Numbered from the stretch's first letter, positions 1 to 46,665 are shown. The stretch: 64,000 bases of DNA from Hemiscyllium ocellatum (GCF_020745735.1 NC_083409.1:8545534-8609533); one strand, 5' to 3'. A program made the numbers and translations. Notes: generated from the letters alone by a model not told the origin.

Positions 1-99
1 TAATTTTCCAGTCTACCTGCATATTGTAGTCCCTCAAGACTATTGTAGCAGAGCCTTCTCTATCACCTGTCCAAACATTTCCATGTGATCTGTCAGCTT

Positions 100-2506: not shown

Positions 2507-4225
2507 TTTTTTCTTATTTCGAAAATATACTTTTTTCATAAAATAATTTAATGTCTGTACAGTTGGTCATGCCATCAATATGTAAACATTTACATACAGA
2601 GATCAGAATTGATCATTTTCGTACATGTCTTTACATTTTTCAATCATATGCCAGCTGAGGCGTCAGCAGAGTCCAATTGACTGCATGGACCCCCTGTTCT
2701 TCTTTAGGTAGGCAGATGTTGCACTTTGGCCTTTCCCCTCTGCGCTTTGGTGGCAGCTGCCTGAAGCTTCAGCGCGTCCCTCAACATGTAGTCCTGGACC
2801 TTGGAATGTGCCAGTCTGCAACACTCAGTCGGGGTCAACTTCTTCAGCTGGAAGAGCAACAGGTTTCGGACCACCCAGAGAGCGTCCTTCACCGAGTTGA
2901 TGATCCTCTAGGTGCAGTTGATGTTCGTCTCGGTGTGCGTCCCGGGGAACAGGCCGTAGAGCATGGAGTCCCACGTGACAGCGCTGCTCGGGACGAATCT
3001 CGACAAACACCACTACATTCCTCTCCAGACTTCCTCTGCGTAGGCACATTCCAGAAGGAGGGCAGCGTGCGGTGCAGCTGAGAGTCCGGGCATGCATAAA
3101 GGATCTCACAGGCAGAGCGCTTCTTACCACCAGCCAAGCCATGTCTTGTTGCTTGTTGGAAAGTTCTGGCGATGAGGCATTCTGCCAAATGGAACCCCTC
3201 AATAGGATCCTCCCTCTCCTTTTCCTGAATGGTCTCGAGGACACTACGTGCTGACCACTTCCTGATGAACGTGTGGTCGAAGGTGTTTTTCTTCATAAAC
3301 TTTTCCACGAAGGACAGGTGATACAGAACGGTCGAACTAGTCGGAGTGTTCCGCAGCAGCGAGGCCAGGCCCATCCTTCGCAACACTAGGGACAGGTAGA
3401 ACTTCAGTACGTAGTGACACTTGGTGTTTGCATACCGGGGATCTACGCACAGGTTGATGCAGCCACTCACAAAGGTGGCCATCAGGGTGAGGGTGGCATT
3501 GGGTTTGTTTTTCCCCCATTGCCCAGATCTTTGTACAGCGAGTCTCTTCGGACCCGGTCCATCTTTGAACTCCATATAAACTGGAAGATGGCCCGGGTGA
3601 CTGCAGTGGCACAGGTTCTGGGAATAGGCCAGACCTGTGCCACGTATAATAGCAATGACAGTGCCTCAAACCTGATGATCAGGCTTTTTTTCCCCGCGAT
3701 GGGGAGCGACCGTAGCTTCCATCTGCCCAGTTTCTCTCTCACTTTACTGATACGCTCCTCCCAAGACTTGACGCACGCCCCAGCACCCCCACCCCTGGAA
3801 CCAAATACCCAGCACATTCAGGTGGTCGGTCCTGACGGTGAAGGGGATTGAGGATTGGTCGGCCCAGTTCCCGAAGAGCATGGCCTCGCTCTTGCCTTGG
3901 TTTACCTTGGCCCCCGAGGTCCGTTCGAACTGGTCACAAATACACATCAGTCTGCGCACGGACAGGAGATCCGAGCAGAAAACGGCGACGTCATCCATGT
4001 ACAGGGAGGCATTAACCTGCAGGCCCCCGCTGCGAGGAGTAGTCACCTCTCTCAGGCTCGCATCCTTTCTGATGTACTCGGCAAATGGTTCTATGCAGCA
4101 CACAAACAAGGCAGGAGAGAGATGGCAGCCCTGCCTGACTCCAGATCTGACTGGGAAGCTATCTGATTCCCACCCATTGATTGAGACTGCACTGACAATG
4201 TTGATGTAGAGCAGTCTGTTCCACT
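2507..4225 (-). mobile_element. Tx1-like (L1 clade) LINE, 5'-truncated ORF2 with 3' UTR and A-tail
   Basis: RT motif YMDDVAVF (ORF 3744-4109); C-terminal region with HACPDS/CPPS..C; T-run at 2507; clearly homologous to 59930-61670. Confidence 0.9.
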
Positions 4226-4942
4226 TGCCGTTCTCGTCTGCCTGATAACAGGATCCACCTCTCAGTATCCAGCCTGTGATGTCACCTTCAGATCAGAAAC
4301 TGTTAATGAGAGAGAACAGGTTACATCAGCGAGACTTTTCCCCAGAGATGATGAACAATGTTGATGTAAATTGCTTTCTCCAGTGCCAGAGTCGAGAACA
4401 AGAGGGTTGTTAAAATTGCAATTCAGGCGATTTCAGGAAAATTTCTTTCCGACAGAGTGATGAAAATCTGGAACGTTCAATCCAAAATTAAAAGCTGTTG
4501 AGATTGGGTTTCAATATCCATTTACTCAGGGCAGTACGGTTTACAGGACAAAGGGAGAATGTATTCCAGGTCAGCCATGGCCTGATTAACTGGGGAACTA
4601 GGTCAAAGCAACCGATTGGTCATCCCTACTGGAATCCACTGGAATGACTACTGATGTGTTTGCGGCTAACGGAAGGAGTCATTACCCATAGTCTTCAGCA
4701 GCTGTGCAAGTCGTCCATAGTAACTAGAAAGCAGCTGTTTCACTGTGCCTGAACAATACAAAGTCAGAGGAAACACTACACCAGGTTCTAGCCCAACTGA
4801 TTCATTTGAAATCACAAGCTTCCGAAGCGCTGCTCCTTCATCAGGTGTATCTCAGTCCAGCATCGATATTTCCACATTACTAAGCAGTCCAAATAAACTG
4901 GGGCTCTGTGAGGATCTATCCAGCTCGACCTGTACAAACGAG

Positions 4943-4944
<2 letters not shown>

Positions 4945-5030
<86 letters not shown>
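4945..5030. repeat. (GA)43 microsatellite
   Basis: Direct read of a perfect dinucleotide run. Confidence 0.97.
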
Positions 5031-5034
<4 letters not shown>

Positions 5035-5039
5035 ATCTT

Positions 5040-5525
5040 TTGAACCAGGATACCTAATTGCACCACAATGAAAATGCTCTGAATGCTATGATATATCAAA
5101 GAGAAGTACTTTGGTGTAACTTTTGATTGTCCCCGTAGTGTGCTATTTTATTCATGATGTGATACACGGAGACTATGTCAGCGTTGGGTGGCAAAAAGTA
5201 TATTTTCTCCACTAACCCGTTTCCATCACACTCTCTCCATCTTGCTTTAATCCTTATTGACTTTTCTACAATTGCCTCTACTTCCTCACTCCATTCCGGT
5301 CCCAAAGGAACTTATGGACAGACTTCATGACCCCACTCTGTCTTAAATTTCATGTGTAGTGTGTTGGAGCTTGGGCCCCTCCCTCAGGCCCAGGTGAATG
5401 GGGCCTTTTAACAATCTGCACATTGTCTTTTGTCTCTTTCTGAGTGAACCGGATCAAGTTGCCGTAACGAGCTGGCAACAAGGTGTCTTGTCTAGAATGT
5501 TCCCAGCATTGGGCACAGAACTGGC
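5040..5525 (-). repeat. Low-copy segment X, copy 1 (inverted relative to the copies at 8546-8950 and 49030-49510)
   Basis: Reverse complement aligns to gaaagagaaaaagcacaatgtgcag...ctgggcctgagg...ccaagctccaacacac...aagagtcaataagg in the other two copies. Confidence 0.8.
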
Positions 5526-6615: not shown

Positions 6616-7719
6616 GATCCCCGCTGTTGAAGTCGATTCTAGGGAGCCTGTTCTCATTCTTTTGTTGGAGTTCAAGGGCAGCTGCTGCTTCCTTGCTACG
6701 TCACTGATCAAACCAACAATGCGGGAAGACTCATGATGGATTGGGTGGTTGTTTGATTTCTCACTTGTGTTAATACAGTTTTAAATGAGTCTGTGTACTT
6801 TCCCCTCTTTCTGTGGAGGGTGTCACTGTCACTGTCCCCACCTGACCTATCCACTCTCATAGTGATAGCATTTTTGTCATTCCTTCTATTTGGCGATGCT
6901 GTCATTCCCCCCTACCACCTCCCCGCCCCCCTCCCCTCATTACAATAATGACTAGACTTTGGAAGTATTCCATTAGCTGTAAAACAGCTTTGAACATCCT
7001 GAGCTCATTAAGGGTGTAACAGAAGTGCAATTCTCTCTCCTTTTTGTTTCCTCTCCAAGCCTTCCCATGTGTCTCCCCACAACATCCCTCCCTTGCTTAA
7101 AAACTAGAATGAATTATGAGTCTCTGGGATAACTTAATCTGTGGCAACATTGAGACTAACAACAAGCACCTCCTTGGTGGGCTTTGAGTGTGAAGGTCAA
7201 TAACAGTCTCACTGGGACTTGATCTGGGTTGTCTCCAGTCAGTCAGTGTTATTGGTTTGGAGCCAAATGTTACTGACCAACCTTAGACCCTGTGATCTGA
7301 TTGAGATGACGGATGACCTGCGCTCGGCTTTAACACACTGTTACCACAGCACAGAGTGAAATTGTGTAGTGCTGGAAAAGCACAGCCAGTCAGGCAGTAT
7401 CCCTGGAGCAGGAGAGTCGATATTATGAGCATAAGCTCTCCATCAGGCATGGGGAGGAGGGAGTGAGGAGTCGGAGAGATAAATGGGAGGGAATTGGGGC
7501 TGGGGAAAAGGTAATGAAGATTGCAATAGGTACGTGGAGGTGGGGGGTGACAAAGATAAGCCAGAGTGAAGGTTGGAGTGGATAGGTGGGAAGGAAGATG
7601 GACAGGTAGGACAGTTCAAGACGGTGGTGCCAAGTCGAAGGGTTGGATCTGCGATAAGCTGGTGGAGTGAAGGTAATTTGAGTGAAATACTTGGTTTGTA
7701 TATCTCTTTACAATTAATT

Positions 7720-12479: not shown

Positions 12480-12808
12480 CTACACACATTCTGACCTCCT
12501 GATGCTCTTGCTGAGGGGAGAGGGGAGGGTCACATGGGTGAGAGCACAGGAGAAGCGAGCGTTGGACTCCCAGTCAGACCCAGAGAGGGTCAGCAGGCTG
12601 CTGACACTGTAGGTGCTGTCCGAATCTCGCAGGTAGTTGCTGGTCTGAACCCCGTCCGAAATGACTGCACCATCCTTCTTCCACTGCACCTCCAGCTCAT
12701 CGGGATAGAAGTGATTGGCAAGGCACACCAGGGTGGCAGTGCCTTTGGCATTGACCTGCTCCAAGGAGGGGGGCAGCAGGATCAGCTTGGGCTGAGAGTT
12801 TTGATCAT
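12480..12808 (-). CDS. IGKC: Immunoglobulin kappa (type III/NS4-like) light-chain constant exon, intact
   Basis: Acceptor ttttcAG at 12810-12809, phase 1; (N)DQNSQPKLILLPPSLEQVNAKGTATLVCLANHFYPDELEVQWKKDG...FSCALTHVTLPSPLSKSIRRSECV-stop; both C1-set cysteines, the Trp, and the terminal interchain Cys are present. Confidence 0.96.
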
Positions 12809-23879: not shown

Positions 23880-25800
23880 CCTTGCTCCATCCTCCTTACT
23901 GACATCTGGGGGCTAGTGCCAAATTCAGGAGAGCTGTCTTACAGATGACTCAAGCAACAGCCTGACACAGTCATACTCACAGAATCATACCTTACAGACA
24001 ATGTCTCAGACACCACCATCACTGTCCCTGCATGTGTCCTGTCCCAACAGAAAGGCAGACCCAGCAGCGATGGCAGCACAGTGGTGTACAATCAGGAGAG
24101 AGTTACCTTGGGAGTCCTCTCCGCTGACTCCAGACCCCATGGAGTCTCATGACACCAGGTTAAACATGGGTGAGGAAATCCCCTGTTGATCACATACCAC
24201 CCTCCCTCGGCTGATGAATCAGTCTCTCCTCCATGTTGAACAGCACGTGGCGGAAGCACTGAGGGTGGTGACAGCACAGAATGTACTCTGGGTTGGGGGC
24301 GGGGTGGTGTTTCAATGCCAACCACTGAGAGTGGCTCGGCAGCAGTATTACTGATTGAGCTGTTCGGGTCCTAAAGGACAAAGCTGCTAGACTGGGCCTG
24401 CAGCTGGTAGTGAAGGAAACAACAAGAAGGAAAAATCTACTTGCCCTCATCCTCATCAATCTTGCGACTGTAGTTGCATCTGTCCTCTATGTGTAAGAGA
24501 GACTATCACAGAGTCCTTGTGGAAACAAAGTCTGACCGTCACATTGAGAATACCCTCCATTGTGCTGTGTGGTACTATCACTATGCTAAATAGGACAGAC
24601 TTTGAACAGATAGAGCATCTCAAGGCAAGCTCAGGAGTGGCGATGATTGCCAATGGTTCCATAATGTTCAGCATCATTCACAACTCCTCAAAAACTGAAG
24701 CAGTCCATGATCAGATGCACCAATATGTGGACAATATCCAGGTTTCGTCTGAAAAGCGACATTTCACATTGGTTCCATGCAAGTGCCAGGCAATGATCAT
24801 CACCAATAAGAGACAATCCAACCATCACCCCTTGACAGTGAATAGCATTACTATCACTGAATCTCCATTGTCAACATCCAGAAATTCAATTGGCTGACCA
24901 CAGAAACACAATGGTTACAAGAGCAGGCTCGAGGCTAGCTATTCTGCATCTAGTAACCCACCTCCTGATTCCCCTAAAGCCTGTCGATCATCAACAAGAC
25001 ACAAGTCAGAATTGTGATTGAATATCCCCCATTGTCTGGATGGGTGCAGCTCCAACAACATTCACAGAGTGATGGTGTCACAAAATCACAGACCCTACAG
25101 CTAAACATGTCCATGCCGACCACATTTCCAAACCTTAACGAGTCCCATTGGCCTGTGTTTGGCCCATATCTCTCTAACCTTTCCTATCCATGTCAATCAT
25201 ATCTATGTCTTCCTAACCCTAACGCTCCACTCAAAAAGCTTGATACTGTTCAGAGCAAAGCAGCCTGCTTGATTGACATCACATCCACAAAGCATCCATC
25301 TTACCACCATTGATACTTAGTCGCAGCAGTGTGTATTATCTATCAGATACACTGCAGAGATTCACCAAAGATCGTCATACAACACCTTCCAAAACCAAAA
25401 ATAGAAATTGTTGGAAAAGCTCAAGTATGAAGGGGCACGTGCCCCAAAATTTAACTCTGATTTCTCTTCACAGATGCTGCCAGACCTGCTGAGCCTTCCA
25501 GCAATTTCTGTTTTTGTCTCATATTTACAGCAGCTGCAGTTCTGTTGGTACCTTCCAAACACATGAACAGCTCCAGTTAGAAGGACAAGAGCAGCAGATA
25601 TATGGGAACAGCATGTCTTCAAATTCACCTCCAAGGAACATAACATCCTGACTTGGAAATATATCGTTGTTCCATCACTGTAAGTGGGTCAAAATCCTAA
25701 AATTGCCTCCCTAAGGACATTATGTGTCAACATATTGTATGCGATTTATCGCAGTTAACTAAGGCAGCACCTTCTCAAGGGATGGTCAGCAAATGCTGAC
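23880..25800 (+). mobile_element. Fragmented APE/RT LINE (CR1/L2 group, family not assigned)
   Basis: Endonuclease-like start at 23900-24300; RT end YVDNIQV..CKCQAMIITNKRQSNHHPLTVNSITITESP (24517-24897); related pieces at 9540-9860 and 30610-31140. Confidence 0.65.
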
Positions 25801-26114
25801 CCAGCCAATGACGCTCACATCCAATGAATTAATATATGAAAACAAATGAAGTGTCCCTCAGGAGAGGAGACGGAATGTTCGGGTCCTGAGCTCCATCCCC
25901 CAGCCCAGGCACTTTGCTTGCCAATGAATGAATGAGATGAAAGATTAGGGACAGTCACATGCTGTGGACCCAGGTATATAAGAGGGAATTAGAGATCAAG
26001 CTGAAAAGGAACGTGTTCCTGGGTTATGGGGAGAGAGAGGGTCATTGAGATTAATTGGGTCACTCACAGGCACAATGGGCTGAATGGCTTCCCACTGTGC
26101 TGTCAGATTTCAGC

Positions 26115-26371
26115 TGCAGACAGTTCACAGTTTTGTCCCGTCTCAGGAACAAATGTCCAGCTGCTCCGAGCTCCTTCTTTCACTTCCTCTCTTGGTGAAG
26201 TTTCAACCTTGCGATATGACAGTCTTTGCAGTTATTTTTTACACTGGGGCTTTCTGCTGTAATCAGAATCTCTAATAATAAGTGTCCGATCAGTGACAAT
26301 CAGAGCAGCTAAGAACAGTCAGGACTGAGGAGCCAGACTTACTGGGAAACATATTGGGAAGATCAAAGCCA
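26115..26371. promoter_or_regulatory. Candidate B-cell enhancer, copy A (Ets-IRF composite site + E-box)
   Basis: TTTCACTTCC at 26178-26187 (= GGAAGTGAAA), CAGCTG at 26158-26163, two TGGGAA; ~92% identical by hand to 30178-30434. Confidence 0.55.
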
Positions 26372-26780
26372 CTCTCCCAGCTCCCAGCTCCACTTCTCTC
26401 CCCGAACACTGTCTGCTGCTCAACCAGACTCTTTACAAACTTGGCTTCATCTCTGAGAATGATCTGAGCCTTGTATCTTCCATATCACAATGATCAGCCA
26501 CTGAAAATCTCAGCCATGTCTTTTGGACTCAAAACGTTACCATTCCAATGTTATCCAAACCCATATCAAAGCCAGTGCTCTGCATAAACTTCAGCTCATC
26601 GCAAACGGTGCTGCCTATATCTGAGCTCACACCAAGTCCCATTCTCCCATCCCACACCGTGCTCACTGACCGACATTGGCTCCCAATCCAGCAACATCTG
26701 GTTTGAAAATTCTCACCCTTGTTCTCCAGCCTCTCCTTGTCCTGCATTCTCCCGATGTCTGCAACCTCCTCCAAGCACCC
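26372..26780 (+). mobile_element. L2 LINE RT C-terminal fragment shared by both arms (paralog 29770-30177)
   Basis: Decayed LQLI.N.AA.I...KS.SPI...HWLP..FKIL motif region. Confidence 0.6.
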
Positions 26781-27099
26781 TCAGTCAGTGTGATCAGCAA
26801 CTTTAGATATATGGCTCTCGATTAGTTTATCCAAGTCATTGAGAAATATCATAAAAAGCTGAGGTCCCAGCAAAGATCCCCGGGAATACCACTATTCACA
26901 TCTTGCTCATTGGAGGAATCATACATCCCGGATTGGTCTCATCTCCCTCTTTCTCCCTATAACCAAGCTAACCTTTCCTTTCCAGCTCAATCTCCAGTTC
27001 CCTATTGAAGACCTGGGTTCACAGCATGAGCCTGCCCCTACCTTGCTCTCCAATTTGGCATCTTATTCAATCATTGGGAGACAAGCTGCCTAGGCTTGG

Positions 27100-28560
27100 G
27101 GTGTAGAACAGAGAAAATAGAATATAGAACATAGAACAGTACATCACAGTATAGGCCCTTTAGCCCTTGATGTTGTGCCAACATTTTGTCCCACTCTAAG
27201 ATCAAACTAACCTACATACCCTTCCTTTTTAGTATCATTCCTGTGCCTATCCAAGAGTCACTTAAATGTCTCTAATGTCTCTGACTCTACTATTACTCTA
27301 CATTCCATGCACCCACCACAGCGTTAAGAACCAACCTCGAACATCTCCCCTAAACCTTCCTCCAATCACCTAAATATTATGCCCCCTTGTGATAGCCATT
27401 TCTGCCCTGGGAAAAAAGTTTCTGTTATCAACTCTATCTATGCCTCTCATCACCTTGTTTGCCTCAATCAAGTTACCTCTCATCCTTCTTCACTTCAGTG
27501 AGAAAAGTCCTAGCTCCTTCAACCTTTCTTCATAAGATATGCCCTCCAGTCCAGGCAGCATCCTGGTAAATCTCCATTGCACCCTCTCTAAAGCTTCCAC
27601 GTGCTTCCGTTAGTGAGGCAACCAGAACTGAACACAATATTCCTAGTGTGGTTTAACCAAGGCTTTATTGGACTGCAGCGTAACCTCGCAGCTCTTAAAT
27701 GCAATTCCCCCCAGCTATTGAAACACACCATGTATCTTCTTAAGAACCCTATCAGCTTGGGTGGTAACTTTGAGGGATCTCTGAATGTGGACCCCAAGAT
27801 CCCACTGTTCCTCCAAACTGCCAAGAATTCTACCTTTAACCCTGTCATCTGCATTCAAATTCAATCTTCCAAAATGAATCACTTCACACTTTACAGTATG
27901 AACTCCATCCGTCACTTCTCAGCCCAACCCCACCTCCTATCAATGTCCCATCTTCACAAATGTGTTTTGTCACACCCTCAAATAATTCAATAAGGCTTGT
28001 GAGACATGACCTGCCCCTCACAAGGCCATGTTGAGTATTTCTAATCAAGCTTTGTTTTTCCAAATAATCATAAGTCCTGTCTCTCAGAATCTTCTCCAAT
28101 AATTTGCCCACTACTGATGTAAGACTGACCGGTCTGTAATTCCCAGGGTTTTCCCAAATCCCTTTCTTGAACAAGGGAATAACATTTGCCACAGTCTAAT
28201 CATCTGTTACTACTCCACTGGACAGATTGAAAAAATCATCACCAAAGGCACAGCAATCTCTTCCCTCATTTTCCATAGTAACATTGGGTATTTCCAGTCT
28301 GGCACAGGGGACTTATATATTCTCATGTTTTTCAAAATTATCAGCACATCCTCCTTCTTGACATCTGTTTGAGTGCATCAGCGTGTGTCACGCTGTTCTC
28401 ACAATTGACGAGTGACTACTGAAACAACATATTCATTAAGGATTTAATGTACATCATCCAACATGGCACAAGCTCCCTCCACTATCCCTGATCGGCCCTA
28501 TCCTCACTCTGACTATCACGTTTTTCCTCACATAAGTATAGAATGTCTGAGGGTTTTCCT
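27100..28560 (-). mobile_element. CR1 fragment in the palindrome spacer
   Basis: MANVIPLFKKG..NPGNYRPVSLTSVVGKLLEKILRD (27884-28192). Confidence 0.85.
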
Positions 28561-28599
28561 TAATCTTACCCGCCAAGGCTTTCTCATGCTTTCCCCCGC

Positions 28600-29425
28600 A
28601 TGACAGCTCTGGATCTGAAGATGGACTCACTTTGGAGTATCCATGAGGCTGAGGAGATAGTGGATAGCACGTTTAGTGAATTGGTCACACCGGGGATTAG
28701 GTTTGCTGACTAAGGGAGGGAATGGGTGACCAAAAGGCAGAGAAAGAGGAGGAAGAAAGTTCAAGTGTGCTCTGCGGTCATCTCCCTCCAAAACAGGTAT
28801 ACCATTTTGGACACTTTTGGGGGACGTGGCTCACCGGGGGAAGGCAGCAGGAGTCAGGTTCATGTCACCATGGCTGGCTCTACTGTACAGAAGGGTGGGA
28901 AAACGAGTGGAAGGCGAATAGTTATTGGGGATTCACTTGTAAGGGGAGTAGATAGGTGATTCTGTGTTAGAGAACGACATTCCCAAATGCCATGTTGCCT
29001 CCTAAGTGCACGGGTCAGAGATGTCTCAGATTTGCTGCAGGACATTCTGAAGGGGGAGGGTGAACTAGGTGGGTGTCGTGGTGCACATCGGTAGCAGTGA
29101 TATTGGCAATAAACAGAATGAGGTCCTACAAGCAGAATTTAAGGAGTTAGGAGTCAAGTTAAAAAGTATAGCCTCAGAGGTAGTAATCTCAGGATTGCTA
29201 CCAGTACCACGTGCTAGTCGGAGTAGAAATGAAAAAATAGGGTGGATTACCAAGTGGCTTGAGAGATGGTGCGGTAGGGAGGGTTTCAGAATTTTGGGAC
29301 ATTGGAACCGGTTCTGGGGGAGGTGGGACTATTACAAATCAGACAGTGTACACCTGGGTAAGCCGAGAACCAATGTCCTTGGGGGTGCTTTTGTTAATGT
29401 TGTTGGGGAGGGTTTAAACTAATAT
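28600..29425 (+). mobile_element. CR1 ORF1 (SGNH esterase) fragment in the palindrome spacer
   Basis: IVIGDSLVRGVDR; VVVHIGSSDIG; VVISGLLPVPRAS; REGFRILGHW.RFWGR (28726-29422). Confidence 0.85.
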
Positions 29426-30177
29426 GGCAGGCATTGATATAGATAACAAACAGTAATAGGCCCAGCACCGAGCCCCAGGACACTCCACAAGTCTCAGGAC
29501 TCCAGTCTGAGCAGCATCCTTCCACTATTACCCTCTGCTTCCTACCATCAAGCCAATTAGAGAAAAGTATTTGTCTTCGGTCAGGAATTAGTTTGGAGGT
29601 AGGGGACTGAGAAGAGGATGATGCGTGTGCTCTCGAATGAGCAAGATGTGAACAGTGACACCAGTGATCGGTGCTGGGACTTCAGCATCTCATGATAGTT
29701 CTCAATGACTTGGATGAAGGAATAGAGAGGAAATTAACCAAGATTTTTGATCACACTGACTGAGGCAGCTTGGAGGAGGTTACAGAGACAGGGAGAGCGG
29801 AGAATAGGGAGGGATTTCTTTTCAAGGATGAGAATTTGAAAATTGAGGTGTTGTTCGTCCAGGAGCCAATGTAGGCTTCATGATGCAGGAGTTGGGGAAA
29901 TGGGACTTGGTGCAAGTTTGGATACGGGCAGCAGAATTTGGGATGAGCTGAAGGATACGGAGGGCAATTGCTGTGAAGTGTGCAAATACAGCATCAGAAT
30001 GGTCATGTTTGGATTCCCATAGACACGGCTGAGATTTTCAGTGGCTGATCTTTGTGAAATGGAGGATATGGGGCTCAAATAATTCTCAAAGATGAGATCC
30101 AGTTTGTAAAGAGTCCGGTTGAGCAGCAGACAGTTCTCAGGGAGAGGGATGGAGTTTGCACCGGGAGCTGAAGAGGA

Positions 30178-30434
30178 TGGCTTTGATCTTCCCAATGTGT
30201 TTCCCAGTGAGCCTGTTTCCTCAGTCCTGACTGCTCTTAGCTGCTGTGATTGTCACTGATTGGGCACTTATTATTAGAGATTCTGACCACAGCAGAAAGC
30301 CCCAGTGTAAAAAATAACTGTAAAGACTGTCAGATCGCAAGGTTGAAACTTCACCAAGAGAGGAAGTGAAAGAAGTAGCTCGGAGCAGCTGGATGTTTGT
30401 TACTGAGATGGGAGAAAACTGTGAACTGTCTGCA
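30178..30434. promoter_or_regulatory. Candidate B-cell enhancer, copy B
   Basis: GGAAGTGAAA at 30362-30371 and CAGCTG at 30386-30391, both unchanged from copy A. Confidence 0.55.
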
Positions 30435-32269
30435 CTCCCTGGAATCTAACAACACAGGAGGCTGGTTCTGGGATTTTTTTCTGCAGAAACAGCACAGTGA
30501 TGGAAGAAGTGTCAGTCACTCTCTCACAAACACACACGCCTGCACTCGGAGATCAGAAACAGAATCCAGCAGCAGTTCTGTCTCCAAGCTGTGAAACCTG
30601 CACAGAATTGTTCCCTCATTCAGTTTATAACTGGCAGGATAGACCAAGCAGGGGAGGCAACACAGTGGTGTGTACGGTCAGAAGGTTGTTGCCCTGGGAG
30701 TCCTTACCATTTACTATGGAACCCATGAAGCCTCATGACAGCAGGTCAAACATGGGGAAGGAAACCTCCTGCTGATTACCACATAGCTCCGCCCTCCCCT
30801 CCAACTTCAACTGAGCAGTCAGTCTTCCTCCATGTTGAACAACACTTGGAGGGAGCACGGAGAATGGGAATGATGCAGGATGTACTCTGAGTAAGGGACT
30901 TCAAATTCCACCATCAAGAGCTGCTCAGAAACATCACTACTGAGCAACCTGGTCAGGTTCCACCTGCTAGACTGGACCTGGGGCAGGTGGTGAGGGAACC
31001 AACAAGAGGGAAAAACGTACTCACCATCACCCTCACCAACCTGCCTGCTGCTGGTGTATCTGTCCATGACAGGATCAGTAAGGGTGACCACCGCACAGTC
31101 CGTGTGGAGACAAAATCCTGTCGTCCCATTGAGATTACCTTACACTTTGTTGGGCAAGAGATATGGGATATCAGGAAGAGTTTTTTTCGCAGCAATTGGT
31201 AATGACTTGGAAATTAGTGCCCATTCAGGTGAGGCAAGTGAAGACAGTCAGCTATTGCAATGGCAGATTGGATGGGCTCTTGATGGAAAAAACCTGAAAG
31301 GCTCTGGGGGTCGAGTAGTGGAGGTGGTAGGACTGACTGGATTGCTTCATGAAATGACAGCATTTGCCTGACAGGATGAATGTTCTCCCCCTGTGCTGGA
31401 AATAGGTCTCACTCAATGTGGGGTTCACAATTAGAGAGTTTTGATGCAGTAAATACAAGACAAATTGTTTCTCCAGGCAGGAGGGCCAGTAACCAGAGGG
31501 CACACATTTCAGAAGAGTCTGAAGGACAAGAGAGAAGATAAGAACATTTTTATCCGGCGAGTTCATGATGAGTGTCTGCAAGGTGAGTGGAAGTGGATTC
31601 AACAGCAACGTTCAAAAGGCATTTGGAGAAATAGCTGAAAAGGAAACAATTGCAGGGCTATACAGGAAAGGCTGGGTAAATGGGACTCATTGGACTCATT
31701 TGATCAACAATCACATTCGGCCCAGCGAACCAAATGCGACGGGGTTGAACAGTATATTCAATAGCACAACCACTGAGAGAAGGATGGATGAAGGGCAGGG
31801 GGTGTGAGAGTATGCTCGAGGGATCTGAAGGCTCTGCTGTCAATGGTGGGATAGCAGTAATGGGCAGGAGACCAGAGACAGATGATGGAAGGGGGAGGGA
31901 GAGAATGTAAGTCTGCAGCAGGACACAGAGTGAGGGAGGAGGGAGGTCGTGGAGGTAATTGGTTGGCAGTGAGGTCATGGTGTCATTCTGGAATGACAGA
32001 CGGGTAAGACAGGGAAGGGCCCACTCCATATCAGACAATGTTGGAGTTTATGGAATGTGGATTCAGGAATCTGGAGAATACATTGGAATCGTAGAGTTAG
32101 GAGGCGGGACGAGCAGGAATTAGGGTCTTTGTGGTCAAGGAGCTGAGTTAGTACAGAGACAGACAATGTCGTTGAGATTGAAACAAGAGACTAACGTGAC
32201 GGAGAGGATGTGGGGGTTGTAGCTCAGGTATGGATAGTCCAGTGGGAAGGAGGCCCATGTATACATCAT

Positions 32270-33499: not shown

Positions 33500-34044
33500 A
33501 AACTCTCAGTCATCTACTGGTCTCTATTGGAGGTCCAATGAACAGGAGGCCTATGTGTACTTGTCTGTCTTGGAGGATCTAGGCAGAAGAAAGTCCATGT
33601 TTACTGGTCTCATTTGGAGAGTCCAGCAGGAAGGAGGCCCATGTTTACTGGTCTCTATTGGGAGGTTCAGTGGGAAGGAGGCCCATGTCTCTCTATAGGG
33701 CAGCCCCGTGAATTGAATTCCATGTTTATTGGACTCTATTGGAGAGTCCTGTGCATTGTGGACACCATGGTGGGAGTGGGGTTTAGTACCTTTCTGTTTT
33801 AACTGTGTGATGGTCCAACATTCACCCCAGTGAAACAGCCTTACTCAGACACTCTTCATGGAAGGGGAAGGAGAGGTGTAGGAGAGGGGAAGGGATTGGA
33901 ACATGTTGTGAATGGACAGGATGGGTCAGTGGGTCAGGACCTGCCCTGTCCCTCCAGCTCACAGCGATGGCCTGAGGATCTCTTCTCTCTGCTGGGCCTT
34001 CATGGAATGAGGTTTGTGTCCAAACCAGTCCCCAGTGAGAATAG
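33500..34044. repeat. Paralogous minisatellite (33500-33755) and conserved island (33856-34044)
   Basis: Reverse complement of 22404-23105; TGTTTAC at 33598 and 33642. Confidence 0.8.
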
Positions 34045-34989
34045 ACCAACAGCACAGAACTGCCCTTCATTTGACAAGAATCTGTCTGTCTGTCTTCCTG
34101 AGTGATACTAAATCCTGGTCAACGTGAAAATGAGGCCTTACTCCAGAAAAAGATATGCTTCTGGGGTCATGGGTTAACATCCATTCGTGGGGCAGAGTAG
34201 AGGGTGATTTATCCTTCATTCAACTGTCACCACCTGGGAATCTGTCATAAAGAGAGAGAAGCAGACAGAGAAATTGACATAGAGGGAGAGAAAGAGAGAG
34301 ACAGATCATGTGTGTGTGAGAGAGAGATAGAGAGACAAAGACATGAGTATGGGTAAGGACAGAATGACAGAGAGGGAGGGAGAGAGACTATAGATTGGGA
34401 TACAGAGAGGAAAGGAGAGAGACTGTAGATTGGGATACAGAGAGGGAGAGAGAGAGAAAGAGGGAGGAATAGAGAGGGGTAAATAATAGTTGGAGACTTT
34501 TGCTTGAAGCGAGTGTTTGGGACAGTGAGAGATGGAGAAATAGAGATTATGAGATGGAGTGAGGAATGGTGAGTGAATTGGAGAGAGTTGTTATGAGACA
34601 GAGTGAGAGAGAGAAAATAGAAGAGAGATTAACAGTGGGAGAGAGAGGTAGAGAGAAAGACATGGCAGATGTGAGACAGAAAGATGGGTGGGGAGAGAGA
34701 GAGAGGTGCTGCTCACCACATTCTGGGAAGATTGTGTACTTGAGAAAGGGTACAGAGGAGATTTACCAAAATCGGCTGTGGGGAAAGATTGGAAAGGTGG
34801 GGATTGTTTTCCTTGGGGCAATGAAGGTTGAGAAGGGACCTGATAGAGGGGTATAAGATTATTTGGGGCAATCTTAGGGTAGATAGGTAGGCACTTTTTA
34901 CATGAGTGAAGAACTCAACAACCAGAGACAGAGATTGAAGGTAACACAGACAGAGAAACATAGAAACTGCAGCAGTAGTAAACAATTCG

Positions 34990-38130: not shown

Positions 38131-40058
38131 TGGGAATCTTTCAGTTGTGAAAAATGCCATTCCATGACACCATTGGAGGAAGAGCAGGCAGTTCCCCCAG
38201 TACCCTGGTCAATACTTATACCCCAATCAAAATTAATAAAAATCTATTTCCCTGCTAATTATCATAATGTGTTTGGAATCTTACTGTGCACAGTGATCTG
38301 GAAAGAGCCACGGGGGCATCCTGAGTTACGGACAGGTGCTACACAAATGCAAATCTTCATTTAAGGTTGGAGCTTCCTGATCCTGACCCTCATCCAATCT
38401 CCGTGCACTCTCACCTTCCTGGGGTCATTGAGTCATTAAGAGAAGTGACCTTGGTTGACCCTGGGGCAGTGAGACTCTTTGTAGCAGCACCCTTGACCTA
38501 GGCCCATTGGTGTGCAGCAAGGTTTGAAATGTAATCTGGAACCTTCCACATGTACACCCAATGAAGTGAGTGGATCCAAGTCTGCTCCAATGATCTCGGA
38601 TAAAGTTCTCCTGATCTGTGGGTGATAGCAGGTTTGTTAAAGATATATCGAGCTCCATCCACCGTTCCAGCTTTTGCTCCGCAGCCCTGGAGGTTTCGCT
38701 GTTTCAAGTGAATATCCAAGTGTTTTTTCAATGTGATGATGGTTTTGGTCTCTCCCACCCTTTCAATCAGTGAGTCCCAGATCTCACCAGCCTCTGGGTG
38801 GAAACAGTTACTCCTCAACTCCCCTAACACTCTGCACCAATTCATTTCAATCTCTCTGCTGATGGAAATCAGTCCTTCCTACCCACTCTGTCCAGGGCCA
38901 TCATCATTTTACAAACCTCGAATGCTCCACCATTCAATATGATCATGGCTGATCATTCAACACAATCCCCTGTTCCTGCTTTCTCCCCACATTCTTTGAT
39001 CCTTTTTATCCTAAGAACAATATCTAATTCATTCTTGACACATACCACATCTAATTCCCTCATGCTGGAGGAATGGATGAGAAGTATTGGGTTGTTATTT
39101 TTTGACCAGTATGGACACAATGGGCGGTTGGGCATTTGGGGTCTCTATGATTCTATGATTGTATATTACGAATAATTAGGTATCAAGAACTGACCCCAGT
39201 AGTGAGACAATTGGTATCGACCTGCCATTCAGAAAAAAAGGCCTTGTTGTTTCTGGCTATCTGCCAACAAGTTCCCAATCCACGTCAGTACATGACCCCC
39301 AATCCTCTCGTTCGTTGGGATTTCACTGATTCAGTTGGACATATTTAATCCTGTCAGCTCTTGCTTTAATCATTTCCTGTTCAATGTCTCCCCTGCATTT
39401 TCTATCCTCCTCTCAGCTTTCTGCAGGTTTGATCTCCAGATAACCAACATCACTATCCCTGTTTGGGCTTCCCTACTCTGCTGCCTTTTGACATCCCAGG
39501 CTGAGGAGTCTATATTTGGCAGTCCCACACTTACTCATTGTGGGAACAGATTCTGAACAATCTCTGTCTCATCCTTCGAGGCCTCCCACTGCCCTGACAC
39601 TAATTTTCCATCAAGTACTTGGTTTCATTCCACTTTTGCTAAATCACTGCACAGTTTTGTAAAATAGTTCATTCCCAAAAAGAAAACTTTTGCACTTGCT
39701 CCATTGTTCTCCATTTGCATCCCTACTCTGAATCTCACTGAGTTCTGATCACTGTCACAGAAATGCTCCCCCATTGGTAGCCCTTACAGCTGCCCATATT
39801 CATTCCCTAAACGATGGTCTAAAACTGTCCCTTCTCTTTCAACCTCACGCTCTCAGGGGCAATTAGGAATGGGCAATAAATGCTGATCCTGGCAGTTACT
39901 CTCATATCCCAAGAAGCAATTTAAACAATACCTGTTCTTTTGTCGGGATTATTCTGTATTGACTACAAATGTTCAATAAGATTGTACTGCCAGTGAATAT
40001 ACTGAGTCAAAATCCATTTGTTTGACAGGGATTTAAATTGTTACTCTTGTCTTTCAAG

Positions 40059-40385
40059 CCGTGAAAACTCTCAACTCAAGCTGACCCTGCTGCCCCCCTC
40101 CCCGGAGCACGCCAATGCCAAGGGCACTGCAACCCTGGTGTGACTTGCCCATCACTTCTATCCCGATGAGCTGGAGGTGCAGTGGAAGAAGGACGGTGCA
40201 GTGATTTCGGACGGGGTTCAGACCAGCAACTACCTGCGAGCTTCGGATAGCACCTACAGTGTCAGCAGCTTGCTGACACTCTCTTGGACTGACTGGGAGT
40301 CCAACGCTCGCTCGCCCTGTGCCCTCACCCACGTGACCCTCCCGTCTCCCTCAGAAATAGCATCAGGAGATCAGAATTTGTGTAG
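40059..40385 (+). pseudogene. IGKC: Ig kappa constant-exon pseudogene (orphan C)
   Basis: ~90% identical to 12480-12808; first Ig Cys TGC>TGA at 40141-40143; acceptor reads tttcaAG, shifting the exon start out of phase; 1-bp deletion near 40350; no V or J upstream. Confidence 0.93.
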
Positions 40386-43835: not shown

Positions 43836-46665
43836 ATATTCGGACCGGCCTTGACTTCGCTCCAGCTTTTGCATCCACCTCTGTCCCTACCCACTCTGCA
43901 ACCAAGACTCCGACTACATTTCCCAGAGTCACCCTGAGTCCAACTGCCTACCCGGAGGCAGCCAGCACACACGCACTCCCTCCTCACCCATACACCCCCA
44001 CAGTGTACCCTATCCCTCCACTTCTCCCTCTTCACCTCATCCCCACCTTCCCACTCCCCCACCTCACTCCACAACCCACCTCCGTCCCAAACTCCTTTCT
44101 CTCCCACACCCATTCCACCGTGTTACATCCCAATCAACCCACACCAACCACATGCCATCACCCTCCCCCCCATCCTTCAGCCACCTTGGGCCCTTCCCAA
44201 AAACATCACCCCCCAGCCTTGCCCCATATTTACTATCCCCCCCGACTTCAAACTCTCTGAGGCCAAAAAGTCCATCCTCAGGAAAGGGCTCACGGACATT
44301 CCTGCCCGACCCCATCTCAACGAAACCTGCACCCACCATGACATGGAGCTCTTCTTCCACCGCCTCTACCTCCATGTCTTCTTCTTTAATAAAACATCTC
44401 AACCTCTCTCTGAAGACCCCCCTCCCACCTCCAACTTTCCTCCTCCAGTTGGTCACCCTGCGTCCCCCACCATCAGCTGAGTACACATCCTAGACCTCTT
44501 CAGTGCTCACCACTGACCTGATATCATCCCCCTCAATTTCTCCTCCTCCCCCCACCCCCGTCACCCTCTCCAACCACCCCTCTCTGATTGAGGACTCCAC
44601 TCTCTCTGCACCAACCCCTGGTTCACTATCAAACCCACTGACAAAGTTGGGGTGGTGGTAGTCTGGAGCACAGACCTAAATGTCACATAGGCCGAACGCC
44701 AAATCTCTGACACCATGCCCTACTTCCCCCTTGCCCATGACTCTGCGATGACCCATCAGGCCAAAATCACTCGCACTATCATCATTGCCTTCAGTGACCT
44801 CCCCTCCATTGCCTCCAATCTTATAGTCCACCAGCCCCACAATGCCCAGTTCTATCTGCTCCTCATGATCCACAAGTCCAACTACCCCGGCTAACCCATT
44901 GTCTCAGCATGCTCCTGCTCTACCGAACTCCTCTCATCCTACCTCAACTCTCCTCCTTGGTTCAGGCACTTCCCACCTCCATCCGCTACACCAACCACAC
45001 CCTCCATCTCTTCAGTAACGTCCAGATCCACAGCCTTGAATGCTTTGTCTCCACTATGGATGTGCAGTCCTTATATCTATCCATACCCGATATGGATGGC
45101 CTCCAGGCCCTCCACCTGTTCCTCTGCAACAGACCCATCCAGTCCCCCTCCACCAATACCCACTTCCGCCTTGCTGAACGAGTCCTCACCCTCAACAATG
45201 TTTACTTTAACTCCTCCCATTTCCTCCATATCCAGGGGGTGGCCATGGGCACCCAGATGGGCCCCAACTACGCCAGCTTCTTTATCGTCTCTGTTGTACA
45301 GTCCCCCTTCAGTACCTACACAGGCACTGTGCCCCAACTCTTCCGCCATTACATTAATGATTGCATGAGTGCAGTGACCTGCACCCAGGCTGAACTGCAG
45401 CAGGTCATTGGCTTTGCCCACTACTTCCACCCCGTCCTCAAATTCCCTTGATCCATCTCGGACAACTCTCTCCCCTGTTTTGACCTGTCCATTTCCAATT
45501 CTGGTGATAATCTGCAGACAGACATTTACTACAAACCCACACATTCCCATATCTAACTGGACGACACCTTCTCCCACCCAGTATCCTGTAAGAACCCCGT
45601 CTCATTCTTCCAATTCGTCTGCCTCCGCCCCATCTGCTCAGATGAGGAGATATTCCACTGATCATAGATATCCAACTGTCACGAACAATGTGCTTTCTCC
45701 TTCTGACATCCACTGCTCCACGTCTATTTCCTGTTCCACTGCTCTAAACCCCCCCCCCATACAATAAAGGCAGAATCCCTATTGTCGTCACTTATCACCC
45801 CACCAATCTCTGAGTCCAACATAACATTCTTAAAAATTTCCATCAACTCTAACTAAACCACACTACCAAATGCATCTTCCTCTCCCCACTCCTGGCTGCC
45901 TTCCACAAGGACCATTCCCTTCGATAATTCTTGATCTGTGCCACTCACACTGCAACCATCCTGAACCCCTCGGTACCTTCCCCTGCAACCTGAAAACATG
46001 CAAAGCCTGCTGGTACACCAATCCCACACCTCTATCCAGGGCCCCAAACAGTCCTTCCAGGTGAGACAGAGGTTCACCTGCTTCTCCTCCAACCTAGTTT
46101 ACTGCATCAGGTGTTCCACATGTGGTCTTCTGTACATCGGGAAGAGCAAACATAAACTGAGGAACATTTCACTGAACATCTCAGCCGGACCCGCAGGGGC
46201 TGAGCAGTCCTACCAGTCAGCACCCATTTTAATTCCCCTTCCCACTCCATTTTTGACATGACCATCATTGGCCTCCTCCATTGCCACAATGAAACAAACC
46301 ATGTATTGGAGGAACAACATCTCATCTTCCTTCTGGCAGCATACAGACCAGATGACTCAACATTGAGTTCTGCAATTTCAAATAACCTCCCTTCCCATTC
46401 CCTGACTCCCTTCCCAGCACTTCTCCCTCCCTTCCACTACTCCATTACACCTACCAGATTCATTCTTGCCACTGACCAACCTGGTCATACCCTCCCCCTG
46501 TCATCACCTATCCCCTCGTCATCATCCTGTCCCCGCCATCTCGTTATCTGCAGCTCTCCCTACACCCACCTCCATTCCTGAAGAAGGGTTCCACCTGAAA
46601 CATCAGCTTCTCCACCGCCTGATGCTGCCTGACTTGCTGTGTTCTTCCAGCCTCCTGCCTGTCAT
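43836..46665 (+). mobile_element. Penelope-like retroelement, long decayed copy
   Basis: RT MDVQSLYLSIP..LTLNNVYFN..QGVAMGTQMGPNYA (44909-45451); GIY-YIG LVYCIRCSTCGLLYIGKSK (45998-46261); hammerhead-like end at 46572-46610. Confidence 0.88.

What the first reader, a model, noticed from the sequence alone, without database searches (positions are those of the whole stretch)
26115..30434. Paired candidate B-cell enhancers with a perfect PU.1-IRF composite site upstream of the V gene
A 257-bp non-coding block (26115-26371 and 30178-30434) is ~92% identical between arms, at least as conserved as the C exon (~90%) and above the adjoining L2 remnant. It has an invariant AGAGGAAGTGAAAG. GGAAnnGAAA is the EICE bound by PU.1/Spi-B with IRF4/8 in the mammalian kappa 3' and lambda enhancers (established). 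An invariant CAGCTG E-box lies 15 bp away, and two TGGGAA (Ikaros/RBPJ-like) sites are also kept. Inference: this is a shark light-chain enhancer placed 5' of V, unlike the mammalian position. The dead cluster's copy may be retained because it serves the live gene as a second enhancer.
Basis: partly seen in the sequence, partly recalled or inferred. Interest (0 to 1): 0.75.

Follow-up and report, generated by a model that had tools for sequence, protein, structure and literature searches.

The report
Conserved upstream enhancer-like block of shark kappa genes
A roughly 340-base non-coding block sits a few kilobases upstream of antibody kappa light-chain genes in three shark species, changes about half as fast as its surroundings, and keeps the same protein-binding motifs as mammalian and chicken light-chain enhancers, so it is probably each mini-gene's own B-cell switch, though its activity has never been measured.

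Summary
Window 26115-26376 and 30173-30434 are inverted copies, 92.0% identical. The adjoining non-coding DNA is 73-80% identical (Fisher p=4e-9) and the C exon 90.6%.

The real element is longer, about 340-350 nt: 26096-26434 (-) and 30109-30461 (+). The window is Hemiscyllium ocellatum. It holds one intact germline-joined kappa gene and a head-to-head dead partner.

I fetched other kappa clusters. The same element lies 2.4-6.4 kb 5' of the leader, in V orientation, in Chiloscyllium punctatum (two clusters plus one inverted copy) and in Stegostoma tigrinum. In a comparison that does not involve the window (L001 against L004) it is an 88-91% peak on a collinear 75-81% background.

GGAAGTGAAA, a 14-nt spacer and CAGCTG are kept in 5 of 6 copies. 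This composite occurs nowhere else in about 180 kb.

The element is not coding, not a structured RNA and not a high-copy repeat.

Best reading: a per-cluster B-cell enhancer placed 5' of V (confidence 0.6). Its activity is untested.

Unexpectedly, the dead arm's copy is the better kept: 6 derived changes in the core against 17 in the live arm. The C exon shows the opposite, 19 against 9.

This scan had already noted the same element about 20 times elsewhere in this genome, and two follow-ups reached the same conclusion.

The parts
26096..26434 (-). Element copy of the live kappa cluster, about 5.7 kb 5' of the leader ATG and in the same orientation as the gene
   Evidence: Homology to L001 3268-3615 and L004 7295 onward starts and ends here. 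nhmmer with the 6-copy profile matches 26446-26086, E 2.7e-118.
30109..30461 (+). Element copy of the dead, head-to-head cluster; closest to the family consensus
   Evidence: Identity is 94.6% to L001 and 87% to L004 over about 350 nt. nhmmer matches 30096-30464, E 2.5e-132. An organism B contig matches 30124-30461 and its homology ends at 30461 (record 16).
26158..26187 (-). ETS-IRF composite GGAAGTGAAA, a 14-nt spacer and the E-box CAGCTG, live copy
   Evidence: The same 30-nt arrangement is in L001, L002b and L004.
30362..30391 (+). ETS-IRF composite GGAAGTGAAA, a 14-nt spacer and the E-box CAGCTG, dead copy
30268..30277 (+). MEF2-consensus match TTATTATTAG (the live copy has it at 26272-26281); kept in 3 of 6 copies
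30286..30291 (+). RUNX-type ACCACA, kept in 4 of 6 copies; lost in the live copy (ATTACA, derived changes at 26261-26262)
26435..30108 (.). Spacer between the two copies: diverged inner flanks (73-80% identical), then high-copy transposable-element DNA at 27073-29633
   Evidence: Summed contig depth is 10^3-10^5 against about 10^2 over the element.
20347..20397 (-). Leader exon of the live kappa gene. The proximal promoter has an octamer variant ATTTACAT at 20504-20511 and a TATA-like box.
   Evidence: tblastn gives a 17/17 match to P0001.
19819..20166 (-). Germline-joined VJ exon of the live gene
   Evidence: Pfam V-set, E 3.7e-18. The ORF runs through the FGKG J motif.
12483..12803 (-). C-kappa exon of the live gene
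   Evidence: Pfam C1-set, E 4.7e-22. It is 96% identical to C. punctatum kappa chains.
40057..40350 (+). C exon of the dead cluster. It has a stop at the first conserved Cys codon and a 1-nt deletion. The leader, VJ exon and 5' part of the J-C intron are missing from this arm.
   Evidence: The arm has no counterpart of the leader-VJ region and most of the J-C intron, roughly live 14600-20900. Against L004, homology resumes at 36220.

Best explanation
The two blocks are two copies of one cis-regulatory module of about 340 nt that belongs to each kappa light-chain mini-locus of orectolobiform sharks. It lies 2.4-6.4 kb upstream of the leader exon, in a fixed orientation, and is separate from the proximal V promoter.

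Most likely it is a B-lineage enhancer. A PU.1/Spi-B-type ETS factor and IRF4/8 would bind the composite GGAAGTGAAA. An E-protein would bind the CAGCTG 14 nt downstream. RUNX- and MEF2-type sites further 5' would help. Together they would activate transcription of the adjoining cluster.

Shown here:
- position and orientation relative to V;
- conservation above the flanks, both between paralogues and between species;
- motif and spacing conservation;
- non-coding nature;
- moderate copy number.

Inferred: factor binding, enhancer activity and the target gene.

In this window the head-to-head duplication gave two copies 3.7 kb apart. The copy beside the dead cluster has stayed near the family consensus. 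The live gene's own copy has drifted more and has lost the RUNX-type site.
For: 1. Identity peak inside the window: 92.0% against 73-80% in the flanks, p=4e-9. This equals the C exon's 90.6%.

2. The same element lies upstream of V, in V orientation, in C. punctatum L001 (3268-3615; leader at 10001), in L002 (4943-5284; leader expected at about 10001, the start of the called gene, VJ exon at 10232) and in S. tigrinum L004 (7295-7634; leader at 10001).

3. An independent species pair, L001 against L004, gives 87.9% by blastn and 91.4% over ungapped MAFFT columns for the element. The collinear flanks on both sides are 75-81% and the V region 85.5%.

4. GGAAGTGAAA, a 14-nt spacer and CAGCTG are kept in 5 of 6 copies. 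This composite, and the element itself by profile search, occurs nowhere else in the window plus five loci, about 180 kb.

5. The 11-nt core AGGAAGTGAAA equals the lambdaB PU.1 site of the mouse Ig-lambda2-4 enhancer (PMC4872103). PU.1 or Spi-B together with Pip activates that enhancer (PMC2192671 abstract). Ig-lambda enhancers of human, mouse and chicken share MEF2, PU.1-IRF4 and E-box motifs (PMC3972084).

6. Contigs of four organisms cover the element at moderate summed depth. In organism A this is about 110-135 single-copy equivalents, against 10^4 for adjacent transposable elements. In organisms B and C the element bins are 3-7 times deeper than neighbouring bins of the same repeat unit.

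7. Stops occur in all six frames, there is no 3-base periodicity and no RNA covariation. There is no Rfam hit.
Against: - There is no functional datum of any kind: no accessibility, histone marks, reporter assay or binding assay.
- No RNA run could be shown to cover the element. X25's label as RNA is a guess, and its depth profile mirrors genomic copy number.
- Constraint is moderate, at about half the flank rate, and not ultraconserved.
- The motifs were picked after the block was seen. GGAANNGAAA alone occurs 9 times in the window.
- No NF-kB or octamer motif is present. The MEF2 match is kept in only 3 of 6 copies and the RUNX match in 4 of 6.
- One C. punctatum cluster (L005) shows no copy in the readable 10 kb upstream of its V. 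An 884-nt assembly gap lies there, and I did not fill it.
- Concerted evolution in a multigene array of roughly 100-200 copies can inflate similarity between paralogues.
Confidence: 0.6

Rival explanations
1. The similarity has no function behind it. Gene conversion, or concerted evolution among the many kappa clusters, homogenised this stretch, and the motifs are incidental.
For: The element sits at the edge of an 820-nt homology segment between inverted arms only 3.7 kb apart, which favours conversion. The dead arm's copy is closer to a C. punctatum copy (95.4%) than to its own partner (92.0%), as expected if it was overwritten from another family member. The dead C exon is also 90.6% identical despite being a pseudogene.
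Against: Conversion alone does not give an identity peak with shared edges in three species while both collinear flanks sit at 75-81%. It also does not keep a 30-nt motif pair with fixed spacing in a kappa subfamily whose element is only 74-79% identical overall. Conversion and selection are not exclusive: conversion may be the means by which constraint is kept.
Confidence: 0.12
2. It is regulatory but not a classical enhancer. It could be the promoter and start of an upstream non-coding (sterile) transcript, or a silencer or boundary element that isolates neighbouring clusters.
For: A reverse CCAAT box (ATTGG) and an invariant A-rich box (GTAAAAAATAAC) lie about 100 and about 50 nt 5' of the composite site, a promoter-like layout. 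A 319-nt contig of run X25, possibly RNA, covers 30021-30336. The copies lie between head-to-head clusters, where a boundary would make sense.
Against: The X25 contig runs across the putative TATA position and into the poorly conserved flank, so it does not start where a promoter would predict. X25's depth profile follows genomic copy number. NCBI gene models for these genes start at the leader, not at the element. The reverse CCAAT box is kept in only 3 of 6 copies. I saw no CTCF-type motif by eye; I did not run a scan for one.
Confidence: 0.2
3. It is a fragment of a dispersed repeat (transposable element) that happens to lie near these genes.
For: The region is full of transposable elements. 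The DNA just beyond the element's outer edge in the live arm, L001, L002b and L004 looks repeat-like and is shared. Roughly 100 copy-equivalents exist in the genome.
Against: Summed depth over the element is 100 to 1000 times lower than over the true high-copy elements at 25300-25890 and 27073-29633 in all four runs. The number fits the size of the kappa array noted elsewhere in this scan. All six copies found lie in kappa clusters, and the four with a V in reach have the same orientation to it. No copy lies elsewhere in 180 kb.
Confidence: 0.03
4. The dead cluster's copy is kept by selection because it now acts on the live gene, 9.7 kb away, as a second or even the main enhancer.
For: Changes were polarised with three or four outgroup copies. 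In the 285-nt core the dead copy has 6 derived changes against 17 in the live copy. Over the whole element the counts are 14 against 28. The C exon shows the opposite, dead 19 against live 9; Fisher p=0.007 for the contrast. Non-coding reference stretches are balanced, 124 against 101. The dead core's rate is far below the reference (p=3.6e-5). The live core's polarised rate is not distinguishable from it (p=0.61), though it is about half the unpolarised flank rate. The live copy lost the RUNX-type site that 4 other copies keep. Family contigs pile up more on the dead arm.
Against: The counts are small (binomial p=0.035-0.044). The cluster may have died recently: one stop, one frameshift and one deletion. 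Conversion from functional clusters would give the same picture. Nothing shows that either copy acts on the live gene.
Confidence: 0.2

Closest known systems
Tetrapod Ig-lambda enhancers (mouse E-lambda2-4 / E-lambda3-1, human and chicken Ig-lambda enhancers)
   Same: The ETS-IRF composite has an identical 11-nt core, AGGAAGTGAAA: lambdaB is AATAAAAGGAAGTGAAACC (PMC4872103). A MEF2-type A/T-rich site lies 5' of it and an E-box 3' of it. That motif set is reported as conserved from chicken to human (PMC3972084).
   Different: The shark element lies 5' of V instead of 3' of C. No NF-kB motif is present and no upstream E-box was recognised. The downstream E-box is 14 nt from the composite, against about 50 bp in mammals. 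There is no detectable sequence homology outside the motifs, and I made no alignment to tetrapod sequences. Function is untested.
Mammalian Ig-kappa 3' enhancer (PU.1 / NF-EM5 = IRF4 site plus E2A site)
   Same: It belongs to a kappa-type light-chain gene. A PU.1-IRF composite and a nearby E-box are its conserved motifs (PMC3972084, legend of Fig. S5).
   Different: Position differs (5' of V against 3' of C). The composite's spacer letters differ: GT here, and CT in the mouse site from my memory, which I could not verify. I could not check that, because no paper held in the library gave the sequence.
Chicken Ig-lambda DIVAC elements (cIg-lambdaE and 3'Core), which target somatic hypermutation
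   Same: The motif vocabulary overlaps: E-boxes of the CASSTG type, PU.1-IRF4, MEF2, and a putative CBF/RUNX site in 3'Core. The adjoining shark gene is germline-joined, so it can diversify only by hypermutation (this last point is from established knowledge of cartilaginous-fish light chains).
   Different: DIVAC is defined by a functional GFP-loss assay, and nothing of that kind exists for the shark element.
The same element noted elsewhere in this genome by this scan (s1-203484, s1-228462 and about 18 further first-reader notes)
   Same: A block of about 280-350 nt lying 5-6 kb 5' of kappa V, with the PU.1/IRF composite and an E-box at fixed spacing.
   Different: Here one partner cluster is dead. 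That allowed a polarised comparison of decay in the element against decay in the exon.

Membership tests
Ig light-chain transcriptional enhancer (E-lambda / E-kappa-3' type) | Raises transcription of a linked promoter in B-lineage cells, independent of orientation and position | not testable with these tools
   No reporter or knockout data are available. No usable RNA or chromatin runs were found for this species.
Ig light-chain transcriptional enhancer (E-lambda / E-kappa-3' type) | ETS-IRF composite element GGAANNGAAA | tested here: met
   GGAAGTGAAA is in 5 of 6 copies from three species. Its core is identical to mouse lambdaB. Only the sequence was tested; binding was not.
Ig light-chain transcriptional enhancer (E-lambda / E-kappa-3' type) | E-protein E-box (CASSTG) close to the composite site | tested here: met
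   CAGCTG is invariant in 6 of 6 copies and lies exactly 14 nt after GAAA in the 5 copies that keep the composite.
Ig light-chain transcriptional enhancer (E-lambda / E-kappa-3' type) | NF-kB and MEF2 motifs (Ig-lambda enhancer set) | tested here: inconclusive
   No GGGRNWYYCC match in any copy. YTAWWWWTAR matches in 3 of 6 copies. An invariant A-rich box fits 9 of the 10 consensus positions.
Ig light-chain transcriptional enhancer (E-lambda / E-kappa-3' type) | Location 3' of the C exon or in the J-C intron | tested here: not met
   The element lies 2.4-6.4 kb 5' of the leader in all four clusters that have a V in reach. In head-to-head pairs it cannot be the 3' element of a preceding cluster.
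Conserved non-coding element under purifying selection | Substitution rate below that of the collinear flanks, in paralogues and across species | tested here: met
   92% against 73-80% inside the window, p=4e-9. 88-91% against 75-81% between C. punctatum and S. tigrinum.
Conserved non-coding element under purifying selection | Not protein-coding and not a structured RNA | tested here: met
   Stops in all frames; indels of 1, 2, 7 and 8 nt between copies; variable columns by position mod 3 are 19/27/25. The covariation term is +3.4, which is unfavourable. No Rfam hit.
Dispersed repeat / transposable element | High copy number, with copies scattered without regard to one gene family | tested here: not met
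   Summed contig depth is about 10^2 against 10^4-10^5 for neighbouring transposable elements. All six copies found lie in kappa clusters. A whole-genome census was not possible.
DIVAC (hypermutation-targeting element) | Raises AID-dependent mutation of a linked reporter | not testable with these tools
   There is only motif overlap with the published elements.

The most novel reading that the evidence does not exclude
In head-to-head kappa pairs the two upstream elements would work as one shared control region. After the right-hand cluster died, its element would have been kept under selection: 2% derived changes against about 11% in neutral flanks. The live gene's own copy would have drifted and lost its RUNX-type site. 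A pseudogene's enhancer would then have been adopted by the neighbouring gene. Because that gene is germline-joined and can diversify only by hypermutation, the element may also be the shark counterpart of a DIVAC, which would place hypermutation-targeting enhancers at the base of jawed vertebrates.
Probability: 0.15. Interest if true: 0.75.

Novelty: new variant of a known kind. Interest (0 to 1): 0.6.

Why it matters
How cartilaginous fish control hundreds of separate antibody mini-genes is an old open question: which ones are switched on in a B cell, and how hypermutation is aimed at them. My searches of the held library found no described shark light-chain enhancer.

This element is short and sharply bounded, and it occurs about once per cluster. 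Its motif pair matches the one that drives tetrapod light-chain enhancers. That gives a concrete object for ATAC-seq, reporter, EMSA and DIVAC assays.

If it is active, the ETS-IRF plus E-box logic of light-chain enhancers would predate the split of cartilaginous and bony vertebrates, while the enhancer's position (5' of V) would not be conserved.

The live/dead pair in this window also offers a natural test of whether a neighbouring gene can take over an enhancer.

Tried and rejected
- Rfam on the whole window gave no family.
- An RSS pattern search found none, which fits a germline-joined VJ.
- Coding exon or leader-like ORF in the block: rejected. The ATG in the dead arm is GTG in the live arm, stops occur in all frames, and there is no periodicity.
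- Structured RNA: rejected, with an unfavourable covariation term.
- Terminal inverted repeats of a DNA transposon spanning 26095-30457: rejected. Homology between the arms continues further out (21385-22946 with 33515-34861 and beyond). The interior is a mosaic of unrelated high-copy repeats. The same element stands alone upstream of V in other loci.
- Solo LTR: rejected. The copies are inverted and tied to V.
- Fetching DNA for clusters of H. ocellatum, Heterodontus francisci, Cetorhinus maximus, Scyliorhinus torazame and the newer C. punctatum assembly failed because the files were too large. Conservation beyond Orectolobiformes is therefore untested.
- Exact-pattern scans of metagenome and prokaryote genome collections for the motif pair found nothing, as expected.
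- A second GGAAGTGAAA in L002 (21513-21522) is an isolated chance site, not an element copy.
- RNA evidence: no run on record as RNA holds the block. X25 cannot be shown to be RNA.
- The published sequence of the mouse kappa 3' enhancer could not be retrieved, so its spacing was not compared.
Full report
**Setting**

The window comes from the epaulette shark, Hemiscyllium ocellatum. The NCBI model P0001, 'immunoglobulin kappa light chain-like', matches the leader 17/17 and the VJ exon of this very gene.

The live gene is on the minus strand:
- leader exon 20397-20347;
- germline-joined VJ exon 20166-19819 (Pfam V-set, E 3.7e-18);
- C exon 12803-12483 (C1-set, E 4.7e-22).

A proximal promoter with an octamer variant (ATTTACAT, 20504-20511) and a TATA-like box lies within about 115 nt of the ATG. 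The block under study is therefore not the V promoter.

The region is a large inverted duplication centred near 28.3 kb and broken up by transposable elements. The right arm is dead:
- its C exon (40057-40350) has TGA at the first conserved cysteine codon and a 1-nt deletion;
- the leader, VJ exon and 5' part of the J-C intron are missing.

**The observation**

It is correct.
- Arms 26115-26376 and 30173-30434 are 262 nt and 92.0% identical.
- The adjoining inner flank is 73-80% identical, the intron 5' of C 78% and the 3' side of C 80%.
- Core against pooled references: 21/262 against 332/1458 differences, Fisher p = 4e-9.
- The C exon is 90.6% identical between the arms.
- AGAGGAAGTGAAAG is identical in both arms, and CAGCTG follows 14 nt after GAAA.

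**What it is not**

- *Not coding.* All six frames carry stops in every copy. Copies differ by indels of 1, 2, 7 and 8 nt. Variable columns show no 3-base periodicity (19/27/25).
- *Not a structured RNA.* RNAalifold gives an unfavourable covariation term, and Rfam finds nothing.
- *Not a high-copy repeat.* I laid contigs of four organisms on 25300-31200 at 80% likeness or more. Summed depth over the element is about 140-760 in the same species, where exact single-copy contigs have depth 5-8. Depth is 10^4-10^5 over the real transposable elements at 25300-25890 and 27073-29633. The tool warns that this is not a copy number. As a rough figure it means on the order of 100 copies, which fits the kappa array size noted elsewhere in this scan.
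- In organisms B and C the element's bins are 3-7 times deeper than neighbouring bins of the same repeat unit. So more copies of the element than of its flanks stay above 80% likeness across species.

**Other clusters and species**

Through V- and C-region protein hits I obtained DNA for four Chiloscyllium punctatum scaffolds (L001, L002, L003, L005) and one Stegostoma tigrinum locus (L004).

The element is present, in the orientation of V, at these places:

| Locus | Element | Distance 5' of the leader | Identity to the dead-arm copy |
|---|---|---|---|
| L001 | 3268-3615 | 6.4 kb | 94.6% |
| L002 (a kappa subfamily) | 4943-5284 | 4.7 kb | 79% |
| L002, second copy | 991-1359, inverted | 3.6 kb from the first copy, the same head-to-head layout as here | 74% |
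| L004 | 7295-7634 | 2.4 kb | 87% |

Homology to L001 and L004 begins at window 26434 / 30109 and ends at 26096 / 30461. This sets the element's true length at about 340-350 nt.

A profile of the six copies finds no further copy in the window or the five loci, about 180 kb in all.
- L003 has only 2.3 kb of upstream sequence.
- L005 shows no copy in the readable 10 kb upstream of a poorly matching V. An 884-nt assembly gap lies there, and I left it alone.

**An independent test of constraint**

Comparing L001 with L004, without the window, gives collinear homology of 75-81% over about 2.5 kb on both sides of the element. The element itself is 87.9% by blastn, or 91.4% over ungapped MAFFT columns. 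The whole leader-V region is 85.5%.

So the element evolves at roughly half the rate of its surroundings. It is the best-conserved non-coding piece upstream of V. A local conversion tract in this window cannot explain that.

**Motif content**

Across the six copies:
- the E-box CAGCTG is invariant;
- GGAAGTGAAA is kept in five (the sixth, the inverted L002 copy, has two changes);
- the spacing between them is exactly 14 nt in all five.

This composite occurs only inside element copies in the 180 kb examined.

The single motif GGAANNGAAA occurs nine times in the window against 3.9 expected. Presence alone means little.

The 11-nt core AGGAAGTGAAA is identical to the lambdaB PU.1 site of the mouse Ig-lambda2-4 enhancer (PMC4872103). 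PU.1 or Spi-B together with Pip (IRF4) activates that enhancer (PMC2192671 abstract). Ig-lambda enhancers of human, mouse and chicken share E-box, NF-kB, MEF2 and PU.1-IRF4 motifs. These same sites are needed for their hypermutation-targeting (DIVAC) activity. Chicken 3'Core has E-boxes plus putative CBF, C/EBP and PU.1 sites (PMC3972084).

In the shark element:
- a MEF2-consensus match (TTATTATTAG) is kept in 3 of 6 copies;
- a RUNX/CBF-type ACCACA is kept in 4 of 6;
- an invariant A-rich box lies between them and the composite site;
- no NF-kB or octamer motif is present.

The whole 3' half (alignment columns about 186-345) is conserved, not only the named motifs.

**Mechanism**

The best-supported reading is a per-cluster B-lineage enhancer. 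An ETS-IRF pair and an E-protein would bind it, helped by RUNX- and MEF2-type factors, and it would act on the V promoter a few kilobases downstream.

Shown: position, orientation, conservation, motif grammar, and its non-coding, non-repeat nature.

Inferred: every step that involves proteins or transcription.

The location 5' of V differs from all tetrapod light-chain enhancers. In head-to-head pairs it cannot be read as the 3' enhancer of a preceding cluster.

**The two copies are not equal**

I polarised the differences between the arms with the other copies as outgroups.

| Stretch | Derived in live arm | Derived in dead arm | Source |
|---|---|---|---|
| Element core, 285 nt | 17 | 6 | |
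| Whole element | 28 | 14 | |
| C exon | 9 | 19 | |
| Three non-coding reference stretches | 101 | 124 | |

- Element against C exon: Fisher p = 0.007.
- Element against references: Fisher p = 0.011.
- The dead core's derived rate (2.1%) is far below the reference (p = 3.6e-5).
- The live core's rate (6.0%) is not distinguishable from the polarised reference rate (p = 0.61). It is about half the unpolarised per-lineage flank divergence of about 11%.
- The live copy has lost the ACCACA site through two changes at columns that are otherwise nearly invariant. It also has a 7-nt deletion at its 5' edge.
- In line with this, more family contigs lie on the dead arm than on the live arm.

It fits a recent death of that cluster, or conversion from functional clusters, equally well. 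The counts are small. I give the adoption reading about 0.2.

**Rivals**

- *Concerted evolution without function (0.12).* This is weakened by the cross-species peak with shared edges and the fixed motif spacing in a diverged subfamily.
- *A promoter of an upstream non-coding transcript, or a boundary or silencer (0.2).* I cannot exclude this. There is a reverse CCAAT box and an A-rich box, but no start-site evidence. The one possibly-RNA contig (X25, 30021-30336) crosses the putative start region and the poorly conserved flank.
- *A transposable-element fragment (0.03).* The depth and distribution data do not support it.

**Novelty and earlier work**

Full-text searches found no paper describing a shark or other cartilaginous-fish light-chain enhancer. 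Subscription-journal literature is largely outside that library.

Within this scan the same element had already been noted about 20 times on other DNA of this genome. Two follow-ups reached the same conclusion. My fetching of C. punctatum and S. tigrinum loci and my alignments were made independently of those notes.

What this window adds:
- the live/dead contrast;
- the L001-L004 background comparison;
- the link to the lambdaB core.

I class it as a new variant of a known kind: an Ig light-chain enhancer-type module in a new position. Function is still to be shown.

**Limits**

- Only one read-laying run was allowed, and all runs laid were contigs, so nothing can be said about transcription.
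- DNA of more distant sharks could not be fetched.
- Assembly gaps in L003 and L005 were left as they are.

Noticed in passing
window 19142-19861 (- strand, 5' part of the J-C intron): A second strongly conserved non-coding stretch. It is 87.3% identical to Stegostoma L004 11009-11723 over 723 nt and 84% to C. punctatum L001. That is as high as the upstream element and higher than the V region (84.7%). It is deleted in the dead arm. It could be an intronic enhancer or matrix-attachment analogue.
   Followed up: partly
window 22300-22750 and 33698-34102: A third conserved upstream block, about 1.9-2.3 kb 5' of the leader. It is 86% identical to L001 8359-8651, and the two arms are 83% identical over 405 nt. 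It was not found in Stegostoma L004.
   Followed up: partly
window 155-628, 4681-4749, 12693-12809, 19819-20397 (- strand): The NCBI gene model P0001 (272 aa) looks chimeric. It joins the leader, the VJ exon and the first third of the C-kappa exon to unrelated downstream exons at 4681-4749 and 155-628, and it lacks a complete C1-set domain.
   Followed up: partly
window 21181-21359: A near-perfect hairpin: 87-nt arms, 94% complementary, separated by only 5 nt. It lies about 0.8 kb upstream of the leader. A related piece occurs in L003 at 7124-7242.
   Followed up: no
window 22734-22995 and 33515-33688: A tandem array with a 44/87-nt period upstream of V, present in both arms and in L001 and L002.
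   Followed up: no
window 21800-22200; 34250-34700; L004 20830-21040; L001 10930-11180: A short-period repeat family recurs at several places in kappa clusters of all three species. In L001 it lies in the J-C intron and in L004 it lies downstream of the C exon.
   Followed up: no
window 25300-25890, 27073-29633, 30619-31200: Very high-copy transposable elements shared by all four organisms laid, with summed contig depth up to 10^5. The ORF at 27718-27918 (-) looked like a reverse-transcriptase tail by eye but had no Pfam hit.
   Followed up: partly
L005 (C. punctatum BEZZ01001156.1), V at 14295-14826: This kappa-like cluster has a poorly matching V (60% identity). It has no copy of the element in the readable 10 kb upstream. 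An 884-nt assembly gap lies at 3286-4169.
   Followed up: partly
protein hits P0070, P0113, P0123, P0126: Immunoglobulin light-chain fragments are filed under bacterial names (Helicobacter pylori, Enterococcus casseliflavus, Aeromonas veronii, Salmonella enterica) on contigs of 0.5-2.4 kb. This is almost certainly host-DNA contamination of bacterial assemblies. The last two are 79-84% identical to the shark C-kappa region.
   Followed up: no
window 98-1564 / 45202-46657; 2508-4228 / 59880-61670: Further large direct and inverted duplications (68-86% identity) link the ends of the window. The segmental duplication therefore extends well beyond the kappa pair.
   Followed up: no
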